A stretch of 64,000 bases of DNA from Haliotis rubra (Eukaryota). A program made the translations under genes and the position numbers. Positions 18,301-32,800 of this stretch are shown piece after piece. The notes under the pieces are model-generated. The model searched no databases and was not told where the DNA came from. It saw only the letters and a program-made list of their open reading frames with translations. Each line of letters starts with the position of its first letter. Position 1 is the stretch's first letter. The DNA is taken from NCBI RefSeq assembly GCF_003918875.1, contig NW_025766636.1, positions 558,001-622,000 on the forward strand, written 5' to 3'.

Positions 18301-21300
18301 AAGGTAGAGTCCCTGTCAGGCACAGTCCAAATAAGGTAGAAATCATAAATTTTATGACAAATATCTTGTGACTAAACTTGAGGGATGAAATGATTTTGAT
18401 ACCATATGTACCAACTGAAAATGTTCCAAACTGTGTAATAGTAAGTTAGTGCATGGTGAATTTAAACCAGTTACACACTGTGAGATGACGATTTCGAGTT
18501 TGGTGATATATGCCCATCCAAGACCAGAGAAAGAAATGCAAGCACTTTCTTCTCATTGGTGTTAAGGGGTCTTTTTGTTTCATTGACATTTTACATGAAC
18601 TTGCCACCTGAGCTTTGTTGTGAGCCAAACTTAAATCACATGATCATGATGCTTCAAATAGGTGTCCAAAATCAACACATCACAAAAATGTGACGTCATT
18701 TACAAAACACAGGGTATTCATCAAAAGAGAATGGGAATTTGATGCACCAGATAATCAAGGAACACTACCTCTGTGAAGGCAGGTTTTTTGACATTCTCTC
18801 TATACAGCTGTTTGTTGATCTGTTTGGCCCCAGGGGTGTTCAGCACGGGCGGAACAGGACTCCCCTTGGTGTCATAGTTGGGTCGCACATCCAGTCGTCT
18901 CCATCCCCCCTTGTCTGCAGGGGTCACGAAGGGGGCAGGGCTATCCTCTGTGAACATGGGCTGTGGTAGGTGATAACCTGCAACGATATTGCATGTGTAA
19001 GGCCAATGGTATCTTTCAGGGGGATAGGGAATCTCTGGCCCTAAATCAAAAAGGGGGGAAGTTTATGGATGTCATACTCTGTATTATGAGGAACACATTT
19101 CGGAGCATATTCTCAATCCTTCATCAGGTAGATGACAGCCTGGAAGCAGACAGCTTATATATGTATATGTGACGACAACCAAAGTGATAAGATACATAAT
19201 ATATGCCACGTCCTTCCCAACATAATACATAAGCTGACATCCATAAATGTCCTCCGCCTTATATCTTTCACTTCCAAATGCCATTCTAAGATCTATTTGG
19301 TTATCAATAACATGTACAGTAAAAAATTAAATGTTTCATTTTATCAATAAAATGTTTAACTGATTGTAGTGTGACCATTGTCATGTATTAACATAACAGG
19401 TGCCAAATTTTTATGCCAGCAACCACCCACTTGTCAGATGCTTGTAGTCTGCCTTTTTTAAAAGGAAGTTATGACAACACCATGATCAGTGCCTATCCTA
19501 CCCATTCTGTTACAGTCCGGTGTCTGCTGGGGAATATATCGGCCACCCATGAGGCTCGGAGTCACCAATAAACCATTGTGTTTGAAGAGAGCTGGAGTTG
19601 GAGAGTCTTCAGACAGACCTTGGTGTGGTGCATACAGTGAACTGAAACATGAAGACTAAATTACAGACCTTACCTGTATATATCTTGCTGTGTTATAACA
19701 TGGTATATCCCACCTGGGATATCTGAGGATCAGCAGTAAACATTTGCAGAGAATGAGTTTGGATTTCCACCTCTTTTGAACATATGTGAATTATATTACA
19801 TGTCAGTAGTCAATGAAAGTCTATTATTTGAACTATGAATCATGTATAGCTTGACCCCTTGTTTTTAAAACATTTCACTCATATCACCACATGTCAGCTA
19901 TGGTAAACAGCCCGAAGTGAACCAAGTTTCAACATCATTACACTTTGGTGATTCTCGTACCAATGAAGATAGACCCTGGATCATACTCTGTATGAAACTG
20001 GCTTGAACAAATGAACATCTGATCCTATCATGCGTAATGGACTGACTCTGAACAGTAAACTGACGTTGTAGCTCACTAGACCTCTCAAGTCCCCAAACAG
20101 CATAAACATAGTACACCTGGGCTGTGAGACATGCTGTGTGGGGGCAATAGCTCACCTGGGCTGTGGGACATGCTGTGTGGAGGCAATAGCTCACCTAGAC
20201 TGTGGTACATGCTGTGTGGGGGCATAGCTCACCTGGGCTGTGGGACATGCTGTTTGGGGGCATAGCTCACCTGGGCTGTGGGACATGATGTTTGGGGGCA
20301 TAGCTCACCTGGGCTGTGGGACATGCTGTTTGGGGGTGTAGCTCACCTGGGCTGTGGGACATGATGTGTTGGGACATAGCTCACCTAGGCTGTGGGAGAT
20401 GCTGTGTGGGGGCAATAGCTCACCTGGGCTGTGGGACATGATGTGTTGGGACATAGCTCACCTAGGCTGTGGGACATGCTGTGTGGGGGCAATAGCTCAC
20501 CTTGGCTGTGGGACATGCCAAGTTGGGGCATAGCTCACCTAGGCTGTGGGACATGCTTTGTGGGGGCAATAGCTCACCTTGGCTGTGGGACATGCTTTGT
20601 GGGGGCAATAGCTCATCTGGGCTGTGGGACATGCTGTGTGGGGGCAATAGCTCACCTGGGCTGTGGGACATGCTGTTTGGGGGCATAGCTCACCTGGGCT
20701 GTGGGACATGCTGTTTGGGGGCATAGCTCACGTAGGCTGTGGGACATGCTGTGTGGGGGCATAGCTTACCTAGGCTGTGGGACATGCTGTGTGGGGGCAA
20801 TAGCTCACCTGGGCTGTGGGACATGCTGTTTGGGGGCGTAGCTTACCTAGGCTGTGGGACATGCTGTGTGGGGGCATAGCTCACCTGGGCTGTGGGACAT
20901 GCTGTTTGGGGGCATAGCTCATCTGGGCTGTGAGACATGCTGTGTGGGGGCATAGCTCACCTGGGTTGTGGGACATGCTGTGTGGGGGCATAGCTCCTGC
21001 CTTTCTGTAGAATATTGAGTGTGAAGTCACTGAGTCCGAAGTCCTCCAGGCGTGGAGTCTTACATTCACTTGGCTTCGTCCGTGTAGGTGGGGTACAGGG
21101 TCTGGTTAAGGAGAGCAACTACCTACATTGTGACTGTAGAAGTGCACTTCCATAAGTAGTACTGTTTATAAGATTTCACTACCAAAAGTTGGACTGACAA
21201 GATTGCACTTCCAGACAGAGGATATGTTTTCACTTTCATGCGTAGAACTGTTGTTTCTTTATTTGCACTTTCAAAAGTAGTACTGACTTCTAGAGTCAGC

Positions 21301-24300
21301 ATAACCTTTCACATCCAGTAGATAGGACTGACTACCTGTTCGCACACAAATAAGTAGCACTGACTGTAAGATAATCGAATCTGACACCTTAGTTTCGATT
21401 TTCAAATAACCATTATCACTATTTTGATTCGATATGTGAATATCTGTTTAAATTGTTTCCACACAGCGAGAACATATTTTTTTCTCCAACTTGAGCAGTT
21501 TCGAGCACTGAAATAAGGCAAAATGTGATTGGTTGAAGCCGGGCTAATTATCCAATGAGAATTGTTGTTAGTAAACATCACCAAGTTGACGATGGATTTC
21601 ACACTAAAAAAGCCGACTCTGGGAGTTAAATGAAATCTGATGTTTTTACTTGCATGAAGAATCGAATTGAAAATGATCGTACTGAGGGTCCAATATTGAA
21701 AATCAAATCGAATCAAGGTCTGGGTGAATCGTTGCAGCCCTAGTGACTACAAACACAAAGTTACTGGAGTTTGTGGTCAACACACTTGATATGATTAACA
21801 CTGACATTATCATTTTGGTGTCTCCTCTACAAGGCTTGACTGTAGGAAGGGAGACAACTCTATTGGGCTCTTACAGAGGCTGGAAAGGTTTCAGCCCTTC
21901 ATACTTGTCATCAAAGGCAGTTGAATGCAGGGTCATGAGTGAATGAGTGAGTGAGTGTTGCTATGTGCCACGGAACCGTGACCTGTAATTCATCCAGTCA
22001 GAAGAACAAGTGATATACCACATCATGTACATACAACCAAACAAGTCACTTGAGAGCAGAGTCCACAAAACCATCTTAGTGTTATGACTATGTGACAGTA
22101 TGCAAGTTATGATCATGCTAGCTCTAAACAGCTTTGCAGCACAGGGTGATGGTTATTTGATTACAGTAAGTTTCCTGTTTCAGCCCAGGATAAGCAAGTA
22201 GGATTTGTTTTGTTCATAATTTGCTATCAGGAGATCAACAATAATTGGCAGTCACTACCATGATAACAAGCCTGCATTCAACATAGTGTGAACCCAGCTG
22301 CTATCTAGTGTGTAGACTTACAGCATCCTCACTTGACTACACCGCACATCGACGTCGGTTGAGGGGTAATAGGGATACTTGAATCCAAACATAGGAACAT
22401 GGTAAAGATTGGACAAAGTCATTTAACACATACAACAATCTGCAAGCTCTCACAAAAAGGATACGCAGTCTCATGCGTGGCTTCATCATTGACAGTTTCA
22501 GGTTCTTCCTTGTTGCTGTCATCACCTTCTCCATCACTGTTGTCATGGACAACGACTGTCGTCACTTCTGGTTTCAAAACCGCGTCTGTTGGTATTGTCT
22601 TCTTAACTGAAAATGTTAGCCAAGAAGTGAAGTCATTGTTTTCATAATAACAAAGATTACATCATAAATGTTTGGAGAAAAATATACAAGACTTTTGGAC
22701 AATCATGAGCAGAAAGAATACAAATAATGTTAAACAAATAATGTTAAACTTGAGCTGTTGTGGCTGTTGTTGTTGGGATATGGGGGCTGTACTGCTTCCA
22801 TCATATCAACGATACTGAGGTGAGGGGGAAGTGGTGTGGGTGAAGTAAGGTGAGGGTGAAGTCAAGTGAGGGTGAAGTAAGGTGTGGGTGAAGTAAGGTG
22901 TGGGTGAAGTAAGGTGAGGGTGAAGTAAGGTGAGGGTGAAGTAAGGTGAGGGCAAAGTAAGGTGTGGCCAAAGTAAGGTGTGGGTGAAGTAAGATGTGGG
23001 CAAAGTAAGGTGAGGGTGAAGTAAGTTGTGGGCAAAGTAAGGTGAGGGTGAAGTAAGGTGAGGGCAAAGTAAGGTGTGGCCAAAGTAAGGTGTGGCCAAA
23101 GTAAGGTGTGGGGAAAGTAAGGTGAGGGTGAAGTAAGATGTGGGCAAAGTAAGGTGGGGGTGAAGTAAGGTGAGGGCAAAGTAAGGTGTGGGTAAAGTAA
23201 GGTGTGGGCAAGGTAAGGTGAGGGTGAAGTAAGGTGTGGGTGAAGTAAGGTGAGGGCACAGTAAGGTGTGGGGAAAGTTAGGTGAGGGTGAAGTAAGATG
23301 TGGGGAAAGTAAGGTGAGGGTGAAGTAAGGTGAGGGCAAAGTAAGGTGAGGGTGAAGTAAAGTGTGGGTGAAGTGAGGTGAGGGCAAGTAAGGTGTGGGC
23401 AAAGTAAGGTGAGGTTGAAGTACGGTGAGGGTGAAGTAAGGTGTGGGCAAAGTAAGGTGAGGGTGAAGTGAGGTGAGGGCAAAGTAAGGTGAGGGTGAAG
23501 TAAGGTGTGGGCAAAGTAAGGTGAGGGTGAAGTAAGGTGAGGGCACAGTAAAGTGTGGCCAAAGTAAGGTGTGGGGAAAGTAAGGTGAGGGTGAAGTAAG
23601 ATGTGGGCAAAGTAAGGTGAGGGTGAAGTAAGGTGTGGGCAAAGTAAGGTGTGGGCAATCTTAGAATATGTCAGATGGTGAGATGTGGAAAAAAGATATG
23701 GAAAACCTAGATTAACTTTGCCCAATTGGACCGCCATAGGCTACATAGTTCTAGTACTCAGAATACACAGGGACTCCATCCATTTCTATACTGACTGTGG
23801 CAGTTAACCACAAACATTCAGATCTCGAAGGTGTAAAAAGTAAAATGACAGCCCATGTATTTGGTTTACAAGTTTATGTCAGGAGACTTATATGTGGCTG
23901 ACAAAGTGCTGAGAGATGAGGTCACCTTGCTTCACATAGCCGTACTGTTCCAGGTAGTCCTCAGTTCCTGTGAGAGTGCGCCTCTGTGATTCAATGAGCC
24001 GAGGAAGGAGGTCCAGCACCTGCTGCAGCCTGTATGTACTGATCTGCTGACTAGCCAGCTTATCCTGGGCCTCTTCCTGATAATCACACACGATTTCACA
24101 GCCATTAACATAAACATTACTTAAATTACATTTGTGACGTCATTCCATTGTCTGTTCGCTCCATTACTTTTCAGGAATGGAGCGATGTGTACCAGTTTCA
24201 AAATAAAACCTTCATTTTGTCATTTTGACATTTAATTTTGATAACAGAAATATTCCCAATACTTCGAATGTAATTTAAGTAGGGTAATATCCTCGTAACT

Positions 24301-29888: not shown

Positions 29889-32800
29889 ATGACCTCAGCG
29901 GGTCACGGAGCTGTGTTCGTGTTAACTGTTCTGATTCAGTCCGCCGTATATATTCATACATCTGACGTCACTCCATCTTGTAATTACACCCTCACGACCA
30001 CCCGGGGGGTGATCCGCTCCCCAAACTACCCCCACCCCTACCCTGGCGGGGTAACATGCCAGTGGCACATTACTGTAGGTAATTATGTAAACGTCAGCGG
30101 CCTAACGATAGCCATTAAACACTACTCCACGCAAGAAACGAACTCAGGAAGGCTGTTTGAGGAGGAACTTCTAATATATGAAGAAAACCCTTCTTTCCCT
30201 AACGCGACTCCTGTTGTTTACACGGAGACCGATGATGTTTACCAGTCACAACAACACGAACTCTGGCTGAGGTTTTCATCTGCTCCAAACATCGGCACAA
30301 AAAGACAAGGGCCGAACGTCCTCGGCTTTGACATACTGTACAGCGCTGTTATCCCCGGAGACAGCTGCCCATCTCGCGACATCCCCGACACTCCCTTAAA
30401 TGCATCCGTTGTTGGCAATAGTACAGTGGGGTCGTTCATCTCCTACAGCTGCAGCCCTGGTTTTAGACTTGACGGGGCTCGTGTGACTGTATGTGTGTTG
30501 GGCGAGTCGGGCCAACCAACGTGGTCCGACCCCGCCCCTTTGTGTTTGGACACGTGTAAACTGCCAACTATACCAAACGGGAACACGCAGTATTTAGATT
30601 TAAAAGTAAATTCAACTTTAACATTTTTCTGTGATTCTCCATACGTCGTTAAAGGAGGAGATACGATCAAATGCATTCTTGATAACAGAGAAGTGCCAGC
30701 CTGGAACAGATCTTCTATACAATGTGTAATTCCTGATTGTTCTAAGCGGATGGTTCTAACACAATTGAGTGGCGCTGTAGTGAACCCGGGTTACGCCACA
30801 AGTGTTATCAACGCCGCCGTGAGCTGCAGTTGGCAGGTCGTTGTTGAGGTCGGTCGGATCATTCACCTTTCATTTCTATACTTCGACCTGCCCGCCGGTA
30901 GCACGCTAGAAGTGACAGACACAGGGCGCGAGAGGAGACTGATTGTACGGTTAGTTGGTGGAGAGGCACCTCGAAATGTCACCAGTCAAACAAATGTAGT
31001 GGAGATAGAGTACCATGGTCCAGCGAGGAACTCCACCGCTCATCAAGGCTTCTACATACAGTATCAGATGGGCTCTCTCCCGATCCTCTTAGATGACGAG
31101 CACAGGCGCTCCAGAACCCCCAATCTACCTCCGGTAAGTAAAACAATAAAACTATACATTAGTTGTAGTGCTTTCAGTTCACGTCATTATACAATATCAC
31201 AGACACGCACGCTCGCACACAGCCACAGAAACACAGACGCACGTGTGTATGTGCGAGTGCGTGCGTGGAGGGGTGGGCGGAAACTGTCTGAATATCAACC
31301 TCTGTTGTCTTGTAAATCCCACTGTGAACACTATGATTACAATGCCTTCTTTTCTATACTTGTATACACGAGGTATTTTGGTATGTTTAGACATGACAGA
31401 TATGTGATGATAGATGATGGAAGTTGGCCATCGATTATAAGTGAAACTATAGGGAGATGTATTTCATTCCTGACATCATTTGCCCCCAAGGTGAATATAC
31501 ACCAATTTCAACTTGGTATTTTCTTGATAGGTAGTCTTACCACAAGGATTGAAATGAAAACCTGATTATATCACGAATAGTCTGAAAAACAGTTATATTG
31601 ACGTACGTTTTAATTATTTCTGTTAGACGGGATTATTTTATTGCATGTTATCGATGTTAACTTTCTGGAGCAATACAGTATTTCACCAGTAACCATATAT
31701 GTTTATACACATGTATATGCATGACAAGATACATTGACCTGAGCATTGTTTAAAGGCGCACATTACTGTGACACATAAATATGGAACCCTCCTCCAGACA
31801 AACATTTTGTCACTTGGATATGCGATCAGCATGATATACGACGTTTGTATCCCCCAGGGTATAATGGTTTATACATCCCCTCTCTTGTAAATACGTTCAG
31901 GCGCTGACAGCTGATGCCTATCAATAAATCACTGAAGCTGTCATGTATTTTAATAGCATTTACACTCACTGATATTAGTGATAACTACATACTACAGGCA
32001 GTGTAGGGTCGTCCTGGATCGTTATATTAATGCAATAGTAGACAGTATTACATATGCTGGCATGTTTAATATTATCCCTGAATTTCTTTACAAAAGTATT
32101 GAAGAACTGGATATAGAGCAGTATAAATCTCCGCCCCATATAATCGTNNNNNNNNNNNNNNNNNNNNNNNNNNNNNNNNNNNNNNNNNNNNNNNNNNNNN
32201 NNNNNNNNNNNNNNNNNNNNNNNNNNNNNNNNNNNNNNNNNNNNNNNNNNNNNNNNNNNNNNNNNNNNNNNNNNNNNNNNNNNNNNNNNNNNNNNNNNNN
32301 GCACATCGTACGTAAACCTAGTACACATATTTCTAAGAGATTATATCAATGTAGAGGCATTTTGGTGTTGGTATTGCACAACGACCTCTGTTTAGATAAC
32401 ATCATGTAATAGTATACCTTGTTTTCTGTTGATTTTCCTTGTAATATTATCCATGGGGATAAATTATTTTAATTTAAAGGGGTGATGGGGGAAGGGTGGG
32501 GAGTGAATGATGGAGTTTTATGTACATATAATCAATCATTTTTAAAACCTTTAGCGTGATATCGACGTAATATTTCAGTATAGACATGTCATTGTTCTCA
32601 AGGACTGCAAGTACGAAGCCATGTATTATGTCTTTACGTTGAGCATCTGAAGCTTTCATTGTTCGTGACCCTATTATCGGAGTTTTTGTGTCTTTTGGGG
32701 GTTTGACGCGGCGCCAGCAGGTAGAGGGTTGTATTTGACCAAGTGGAAACCGGGGGATGTTAATTCTTATAGACAACACCTGTACACTCACACGGAACAA

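What the first reader, a model, noticed from the sequence alone, without database searches (positions are those of the whole stretch)
21093..22464. U12-type intron probably ending in non-canonical GT-AC
Seen: donor GC|GTATCCTTT and branch TCCTTAAC, both matching minor-spliceosome consensus. The nearest AG (21103-21102) is only about 4 nt after the branch A, shorter than the usual ~10-20 nt. An AC (21094-21093) lies about 13 nt after the branch A and keeps the same frame (9 nt further). Inference: a rare hybrid GT-AC minor intron, possibly an AT-AC to GT-AG conversion intermediate, immediately upstream of the exon carrying the decoy-donor array.
Basis: partly seen in the sequence, partly recalled or inferred. 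Interest (0 to 1): 0.72.

Follow-up and report, generated by a model that had tools for sequence, protein, structure and literature searches.

The report
Abalone SKA3 minor intron, odd end

Summary
An AG lies 4 nt after the branch A and an AC 13 nt after it.

The window is Haliotis rubra contig QXJH01000257.1. The gene is LOC124279820 (XP_046571652.1), an SKA3-like protein of eight coding exons. Only an acceptor at TG (21097-21096; exon 4 starts at 21095) reproduces that RefSeq protein (…HETA-T-PPTR…). The AG and AC models do not. The junction placement is unambiguous on the U12 donor.

H. rufescens RefSeq uses the homologous site as GT-CG. H. asinina and H. cracherodii models use the AG. No model uses AC.

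In a published count of conserved animal minor introns, GT-CG has 46 cases, GT-TG 29 and GT-AC 1.

Most likely this is a rare but known GT-YG minor intron, with the 3' site set by distance from the branch site and a decoy AG too close to use. GT-AC and the "AT-AC to GT-AG intermediate" idea are not supported.

The scan had noted other U12 introns in this genome, but not this one.

The parts
22465..22606 (-). Exon 3 of the SKA3-like gene (142 nt), ending ...GAG ACT GC; the intron that follows is phase 2
   Evidence: exon boundaries that reproduce XP_046571652.1
22456..22464 (-). U12-type 5' splice site GTATCCTTT (9/9 match to RTATCCTTT), preceded by GC, i.e. no -1 G
   Evidence: identical in H. 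rufescens, H. asinina and H. cracherodii
21096..22464 (-). Intron 3 as in the public RefSeq model: 1369 nt, GT...TG, U12-type
   Evidence: the only acceptor that reproduces the RefSeq protein. On the U12 donor the placement is unique at nucleotide level (G22464 differs from T21095; C22465 differs from G21096)
21105..21112 (-). U12 branch-point sequence TCCTTAAC (8/8 match to TCCTTRAY); candidate branch A's at 21107 and 21106
   Evidence: invariant in four Haliotis species
21102..21103 (-). Decoy AG, 4-5 nt after the branch A. It is used in the H. asinina and H. cracherodii RefSeq models but not in the H. rubra or H. rufescens models
21096..21097 (-). Annotated 3' terminal dinucleotide TG, 10-11 nt after the branch A. 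The terminal G is invariant in four species; the penultimate base is T or C
21093..21094 (-).
20961..21095 (-). Exon 4 (135 nt) encoding T-PPTRTKPSECKTPRLEDFGLSDFTLNILQKG.... Its 3' end overlaps the start of a 38-nt tandem array
   Evidence: between-species differences fall mostly on third codon positions in the annotated frame

Best explanation
Intron 3 (window 22464-21096, minus strand) of the Haliotis rubra SKA3-like gene LOC124279820 is a U12-type intron removed by the minor spliceosome. By the established mechanism, the U11/U12 di-snRNP pairs with the donor GTATCCTTT and with the branch site TCCTTAAC. The 3' site is then chosen mainly by its distance from the branch adenosine. The AG only 4-5 nt downstream is too close. 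The site used is the G 10-11 nt downstream, giving a rare non-canonical GT-TG intron (GT-CG in H. rufescens) and the protein junction ...HETA|TPPTR.... Shown here: the motifs, their spacing, their conservation, and that the public RefSeq model on this same DNA needs the TG site. Inferred: that this model reflects real mRNA, and that the minor spliceosome does the splicing.
For: Motifs and coordinates. The window is identical to H. rubra GCA_003918875.1 QXJH01000257.1. An exon chain with six GT-AG introns plus intron 3 ending in TG reproduces XP_046571652.1 exactly; the AG and AC variants do not. The H. rufescens model XP_048239863.1 puts the acceptor at the homologous position after CG, although the same in-frame AG lies 6 nt upstream. 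As I understand gene finders, they do not choose such sites without transcript alignments (own knowledge). The terminal G at +10 is invariant in four species while the base before it varies between T and C. The 6 nt between the AG and the YG vary at 3 of 6 positions, two of them at first codon positions of the AG frame. From the YG site on, differences fall mostly on third codon positions (3/1/12 for rubra versus rufescens). Literature: the optimum branch-to-3' site distance is 11-13 nt and either A can branch. GT-TG, GT-CG and GT-GG are recurrent rare minor-intron termini. The donor pairs with U1 at only +1 to +3 and lacks AG at -2/-1, the context reported for U12-like introns that the major spliceosome can also splice.
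Against: Two of four Haliotis RefSeq models (H. asinina, H. cracherodii; the higher accession numbers, so probably the later annotations) use the AG instead. The annotation evidence is therefore split 2:2 between YG and AG, and the split could reflect pipeline version rather than biology. At protein level alone a one-base-shifted TA-GT placement is equivalent; it is rejected only because it ignores the donor motif. A distance of 10-11 nt is at the short edge of the quoted optimum, whereas AC at 13-14 nt sits inside or just past it.
Confidence: 0.66

Rival explanations
1. GT-AG reading. The intron ends at the AG 21103-21102 (exon 4 from 21101, protein ...ETAPCTPPTR...). It would be removed either by the major spliceosome or by a minor spliceosome that uses a branch other than the consensus TCCTTAAC.
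For: The RefSeq models of H. asinina (…ETASCTPPTR…) and H. cracherodii (…ETSPRTPPMR…) use the homologous AG. CAG is invariant in four species. A moderately pyrimidine-rich stretch (TTGCTCTCCTT) precedes it.
Against: The AG is 4-5 nt from the only consensus branch A's, far below the 11-13 nt optimum. Between the two consensus A's and A21120, 18 nt before the AG, the sequence has no other A, and the context of A21120 is not branch-like. The donor TGC|GTATCC matches the U1 consensus only at +1 to +3. The H. rubra and H. rufescens models reject this AG although it is canonical and in frame. The two extra codons change non-synonymously between species: PC, PR, SC, PR. A canonical AG is the expected fallback of a gene finder when a non-consensus junction is filtered out (own knowledge).
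Confidence: 0.14
2. First reader's reading. The intron is a GT-AC hybrid minor intron ending at AC 21094-21093 (exon 4 from 21092, protein ...ETAPPTR...), possibly an AT-AC to GT-AG conversion intermediate.
For: AC lies 13-14 nt after the branch A, inside or just past the 11-13 nt optimum. It is in frame and preceded by T, giving YAC. The AC is invariant in four species, though that is equally expected if it is the start of a Thr codon.
Against: No public model in any of four abalones uses it. An AC junction cannot be re-placed to give the extra Thr of the RefSeq protein. GT-AC is 1 of about 73,700 conserved animal minor introns and is described as disfavoured. Among GT introns with a non-G last base, only GT-AT is listed as supporting productive splicing in the mutational work as summarised. 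All four species start the intron with G, so nothing points to AT-AC ancestry. The bivalve intron at the same place is GT-AG.
Confidence: 0.07
3. Mixed use. Two or three of the in-frame sites (AG +4, YG +10, AC +13) are used at appreciable levels, giving proteins that differ by one to three residues in a disordered linker. The ratios would differ between species or tissues.
For: All three sites are in frame and conserved in four species. RefSeq models disagree between species. U12 3' site choice is described as error-prone, and alternative 3' sites have been observed. Non-canonical sites are often involved in alternative splicing.
Against: Each of the four species has a single named protein without isoform labels in the collections searched. 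There are no reads to show any second junction.
Confidence: 0.13

Closest known systems
[quoted passage not shown] 2006 (PMC1557818), Larue & Roy 2023 (PMC10639083) and de Wolf et al. 2021 (PMC8280824)
   Same: Perfect U12 donor and branch site, first base G, last base G, non-A penultimate base, and a short branch-to-3' site distance. The penultimate base drifts between species (T or C) while the terminal G stays.
   Different: This intron has a conserved in-frame AG 6 nt upstream, inside the minimum-distance zone, which half of the public abalone models take as the acceptor. Transcript support was not seen here.
Canonical GT-AG U12-type introns
   Same: Same donor, same branch site, same presumed machinery (U11/U12, U4atac/U6atac, U5).
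   Different: The only AG near the branch site is 4-5 nt away instead of about 10-15 nt. The position at the proper distance carries YG.
AT-AG minor introns, the documented intermediates of AT-AC/GT-AG subtype switching (Sheth et al. 2006)
   Same: One terminal base departs from a canonical pair.
   Different: Those introns mix an A start with a G end. Here the start is G in all four species and the end as annotated is G, so this is not a hybrid of the two subtypes.
U2-type GT-TG introns (e.g. GNAS, TSPYL2; Parada et al. 2014, PMC4176328)
   Same: Same terminal dinucleotides.
   Different: Those introns have U2-type donors and polypyrimidine tracts. This one has U12 signals and a donor that fits U1 very poorly.

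Membership tests
U12-type (minor-spliceosome) intron | 5' splice site matching RTATCCTTT from +1 | tested here: met
   GTATCCTTT at 22464-22456, 9/9; identical in four Haliotis species
U12-type (minor-spliceosome) intron | Branch-point sequence matching TCCTTRAY close to the 3' end | tested here: met
   TCCTTAAC at 21112-21105, 8/8; invariant in four species
U12-type (minor-spliceosome) intron | Branch A to 3' splice site distance of roughly 10-15 nt (optimum 11-13, PMC3584512) | tested here: met
   TG end: 10 nt from A21106, 11 nt from A21107. AC end: 13-14 nt. The AG end at 4-5 nt fails this test
U12-type (minor-spliceosome) intron | No distinct polypyrimidine tract between branch site and 3' site | tested here: met
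   The spacer is CAGACCCTG. The pyrimidines just upstream belong to the branch-site motif and its flank
U12-type (minor-spliceosome) intron | Excision depends on U11/U12/U4atac/U6atac snRNPs | not testable with these tools
   Needs knock-down or lariat mapping. Molluscs are reported as relatively rich in minor introns, and the scan noted other U12 introns in this genome
GT-NG non-canonical G-type minor intron | Intron begins GT and ends in G preceded by a base other than A, in the mature-mRNA junction | tested here: inconclusive
   Met by the RefSeq models of H. rubra (TG) and H. rufescens (CG). Not met by the H. asinina and H. cracherodii models, which use AG. No reads were available
   The AC model gives ...ETAPPTR..., which differs from the public protein on this DNA. 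No ortholog model uses it. Tested against annotation only, not against reads
SKA3 (spindle and kinetochore-associated protein 3) | N-terminal coiled-coil region homologous to the SKA3 part of the SKA core complex | tested here: met
   A profile of four mollusc proteins has human SKA3 (4aj5) as its best PDB match, E = 0.0018, covering residues 6-101 of the 101-residue chain. NCBI names the H. asinina and H. cracherodii orthologs SKA3-like. No Pfam family matched, so the support is weak

The most novel reading that the evidence does not exclude
The minor spliceosome of abalone may really use the AC at +13, alone or beside the YG at +10. That would make this one of the very few natural GT-AC hybrid minor introns, and a gene in which three conserved in-frame 3' sites within 9 nt compete by distance alone.
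Probability: 0.07. Interest if true: 0.55.

Novelty: new member of a known kind. Interest (0 to 1): 0.3.

Why it matters
This is a clean natural example of the distance rule for minor-spliceosome 3' site choice. A conserved, in-frame, canonical AG is apparently skipped because it lies 4 nt from the branch A. A YG at 10 nt is used instead, with only the terminal G held constant over abalone evolution. The case also exposes an annotation conflict: two abalone RefSeq sets take the YG and two take the AG, changing the protein by two residues. That conflict is a useful test case for how pipelines handle non-consensus minor introns. Biologically the effect is small, one to three residues in a poorly conserved linker of SKA3. 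The class of intron (GT-NG) is already catalogued.

Tried and rejected
No junction counts exist in this report.

2. Transcript-derived protein fragments. Exon 3 searched alone by reference found no candidates. P0001:100-260 found none below E = 0.01. Full-length P0001 found only four annotated mollusc proteins, and a cluster look-up added H. cracherodii. No Logan or TSA-type fragment spans the junction.

3. Pfam on the six exon translations and on the full proteins gave nothing significant.

4. Rfam on 20900-22700 gave only a sub-threshold chance match, so no known RNA gene is detected in the intron.

5. The primary experimental papers on U12 3' site choice (PMC86782, PMC1370826, PMC60238) are not held. 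Their results are cited only through reviews and later papers.

6. 'SKA3' together with 'minor intron' finds no paper.

7. Motif counts in the window alone do not exceed chance. I rejected them as evidence by themselves.

8. Conservation cannot separate TG from AC. The three bases T/A-A-C behave the same under both models.

9. I did not search with a spliced model of my own. Exons were searched one by one by reference, and full-length queries were public proteins by id. The only joined step was a local comparison of concatenated exons with the public protein, and it was sent to no search tool.

10. I did not look at human SKA3 gene structure.
Full report
**What is in the sequence**

On the minus strand, exon 3 ends ...CAT GAG ACT GC at 22465. 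It is followed by GTATCCTTT (22464-22456), a 9/9 match to the U12 donor consensus RTATCCTTT.

Near the other end of the intron, TCCTTAAC occupies 21112-21105. This is the U12 branch-site consensus, with its two A's at 21107 and 21106.

Downstream the sequence reads CAG ACCCTG TAC CCC ACC. It offers three candidate intron ends:
- An AG ends at 21102, 4 nt after A21106.
- A TG ends at 21096, 10 nt after.
- An AC ends at 21093, 13 nt after.

All three keep the reading frame and give no stop codon.

Each motif occurs once in the window. The counts alone are not above chance: 0.6 and 2.2 matches are expected, and RTATCCTT gives 3 matches against 4.85 expected. The significance comes from the placement of the motifs at annotated exon borders and from their conservation.

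**Which gene and genome**

- Exon 4, searched alone by reference, found one full-length protein at 100% identity: XP_046571652.1, 'uncharacterized protein LOC124279820 [Haliotis rubra]', 512 aa.
- The genomic locus of that protein (GCA_003918875.1, QXJH01000257.1) is base-for-base the reverse complement of window 28333-13395. The public model is therefore annotated on this very DNA.
- Orthologs were found in H. asinina ('spindle and kinetochore-associated protein 3-like'), H. rufescens, H. cracherodii ('SKA complex subunit 3-like') and the mussel Potamilus streckersoni.
- A profile of four of these proteins (all but H. cracherodii) has human SKA3 (PDB 4aj5) as its best match. E is 0.0018 and the match covers almost the whole 101-residue chain.
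- Pfam has no family for the protein. The SKA3 assignment is reasonable but rests on weak similarity and on NCBI's naming.

**The gene model**

I mapped the public protein back onto the locus. This gives eight coding exons, in window coordinates on the minus strand:

| Exon | Window coordinates |
|---|---|
| 1 | 26333-26157 |
| 2 | 24076-23926 |
| 3 | 22606-22465 |
| 4 | 21095-20961 |
| 5 | 19641-19502 |
| 6 | 18977-18769 |
| 7 | 18164-17910 |
| 8 | 15724-15395 |

Six introns are GT-AG. Intron 3 is the exception.

The protein reads ...NDEATHETA-T-PPTRTKPSEC.... This requires GC|T ACC CCA, so exon 4 starts at T21095 and the intron ends in TG (21097-21096).

Concatenating the exons reproduces the public protein exactly with the TG acceptor. 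It does not with the AG acceptor (ETAPCTPPTR, 514 aa) or the AC acceptor (ETAPPTR, 511 aa).

At nucleotide level the junction cannot be slid, because G22464 differs from T21095 and C22465 differs from G21096. At protein level a one-base shift (TA-GT) is equivalent, but it would ignore the donor motif.

That concatenation was a local comparison only.

**Comparison between species**

All four abalones keep GTATCCTTTTTG at the donor and TCCTTAAC-CAG-A at the 3' end. The sequences that follow the branch site are:

| Species | Sequence after TCCTTAAC | RefSeq acceptor | Protein at junction |
|---|---|---|---|
| H. rubra | CAGACCCTG\|TACCCC | TG | ETA-T-PPTR |
| H. rufescens | CAGACCCCG\|AACGCC | CG | ETT-T-PPTR |
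| H. cracherodii | CAGACCCCG TACGCC | AG | ETSPRTPPMR |
| H. asinina | CAGATCTTG TACCCC | AG | ETASCTPPTR |

- The G at +10 is invariant, while the base before it is T or C.
- The H. rufescens RefSeq model places its acceptor after that CG, at the position homologous to the H. rubra TG.
- The H. asinina and H. cracherodii models take the AG instead.
- No model takes the AC.

The two YG models have the lower accession numbers (XP_046..., XP_048...) and the two AG models the higher ones (XP_067..., XP_071...). The split may reflect annotation-pipeline version rather than biology, but I could not test this.

My reading runs as follows and rests on my own knowledge of gene finders. A gene finder has no reason to prefer TG or CG over an in-frame canonical AG 6 nt away unless transcript alignments force it. 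Falling back to the AG is what one expects when a non-consensus junction is filtered out.

**Substitution pattern**

In the first 100 nt of exon 4, counted in the annotated frame from the YG site, differences fall mostly on third codon positions. The counts at positions 1/2/3 are 3/1/12 for H. rubra versus H. rufescens and 1/1/5 for H. rubra versus H. asinina.

The 6 nt between the AG and the YG (ACCCTG, ACCCCG, ATCTTG) vary at three positions. Two of these are first codon positions in the AG frame and would change the residues (PC, PR, SC). This fits an intronic status for those 6 nt, but the sample is tiny.

The three bases between the YG and the AC sites behave the same under both models, so they cannot decide between TG and AC.

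**Mechanism and literature**

- The review PMC3584512 states that U12 introns are defined by donor and branch site, and that either A of the branch motif can be used.
- It gives the optimum branch-to-3' site distance as 11-13 nt.
- It also says 3' site choice is error-prone, and that the mixed pairs AT-AG and GT-AC 'appear to be disfavored'.
- Sheth et al. 2006 list natural non-canonical minor introns as AT-AG, AT-AA, AT-AT, GT-AT, GT-GG, GT-TG and GC-AG, with no GT-AC.
- The same paper summarises the mutational work as showing productive splicing for AT-AN and GT-AT.
- Table S1 of Larue & Roy 2023 counts, among conserved animal minor introns: GT-AG 54,669; AT-AC 16,044; GT-GG 159; GT-CG 46; GT-TG 29; GT-AC 1.
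- de Wolf et al. 2021 list GT-TG among human G-type minor introns.
- The donor here (TGC|GTATCC) matches the U1 consensus only at +1 to +3.
- It also lacks the AG at -2/-1 seen in U12-like introns that the major spliceosome can splice as well.
- Between the two consensus A's and A21120, 18 nt before the AG, the sequence has no other A. So the AG has no plausible alternative branch at a workable distance.

Together these points make GT-YG at +10 the best-supported end. AG at +4 is mechanistically unlikely. GT-AC is the least supported, although its spacing is good.

**Evolutionary reading**

Nothing supports an AT-AC ancestry. All four abalones begin the intron with G and keep the terminal G at +10.

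In the mussel Potamilus, a phase-2 intron lies in the same linker, 18 residues before the conserved TPKLEDFG motif (12 residues in abalone). It is GT-AG with donor GTACCATTG, which is not U12-like, and a pyrimidine-rich 3' end ...GACTTTAACTCCTTTTAG. CTTTAAC lies 10 nt before that AG and differs from CCTTAAC by one base. This could be a remnant of a U12-to-U2 conversion or simply chance.

**Limits**

- All three word searches and the single large protein search were used, and none returned a transcript-derived fragment across the junction.
- The choice among the three 3' sites therefore rests on public annotation (split 2:2:0), comparative sequence, and published frequencies and rules.
- I put about 0.95 on 'U12-type intron'.
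- I put about two in three on 'YG at +10 is the main 3' site in H. rubra'.

**Verdict**

Its specific claim of a GT-AC conversion intermediate is most likely wrong.

The feature is a new member of a known, rare class (GT-NG minor introns). Its interest is modest. It is mainly a natural illustration of the distance rule and an annotation conflict worth resolving with junction reads.

Noticed in passing
window 20107-20996: A 38-nt tandem array of about 23 copies (90% matches) begins inside the 3' end of exon 4 and repeats the exon-4 donor junction (CCCAG|GTGAGC) through the first 850 nt of intron 4. The RefSeq model uses the first copy (20961|20960). The scan has already noted this separately.
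   Followed up: partly
window 22818-23500 and beyond: A 16-nt tandem array (AGGTGAGGGTGAAGTA on the plus strand, at least 43 copies, 82% matches) fills much of intron 2 of the same gene. It creates long spurious minus-strand ORFs of 150-290 aa.
   Followed up: no
L003:4174-5082 (H. asinina), L005:4157-7614 (H. cracherodii), compared with L001 and L002: RefSeq models of four abalone species disagree on the acceptor of the same U12 intron. The two lower-numbered accessions use YG at +10 and the two higher-numbered ones use AG at +4. This changes the protein by two residues and may be an effect of annotation-pipeline version.
   Followed up: partly
L004:8703-18363 (Potamilus streckersoni): The bivalve intron at the same place and phase is GT-AG with a non-U12 donor (GTACCATTG). 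It keeps CTTTAAC 10 nt before the AG, which may be a remnant of a U12-to-U2 conversion or chance.
   Followed up: partly
window 29889-31565 (+): An uninterrupted 558-aa ORF on the plus strand begins with a signal-like segment and has cysteine patterns that look like CUB/sushi-type extracellular domains. It was not searched.
   Followed up: no
window about 32090-32310: A run of N (assembly gap or masked stretch) shows up as X runs in ORFs on both strands.
   Followed up: no
P0002 (1591 aa): A long repetitive protein in the representative library matches exon 4 in nine stretches at 38% identity. This is probably a translated tandem array related to the 38-nt repeat. It was not examined.
   Followed up: no
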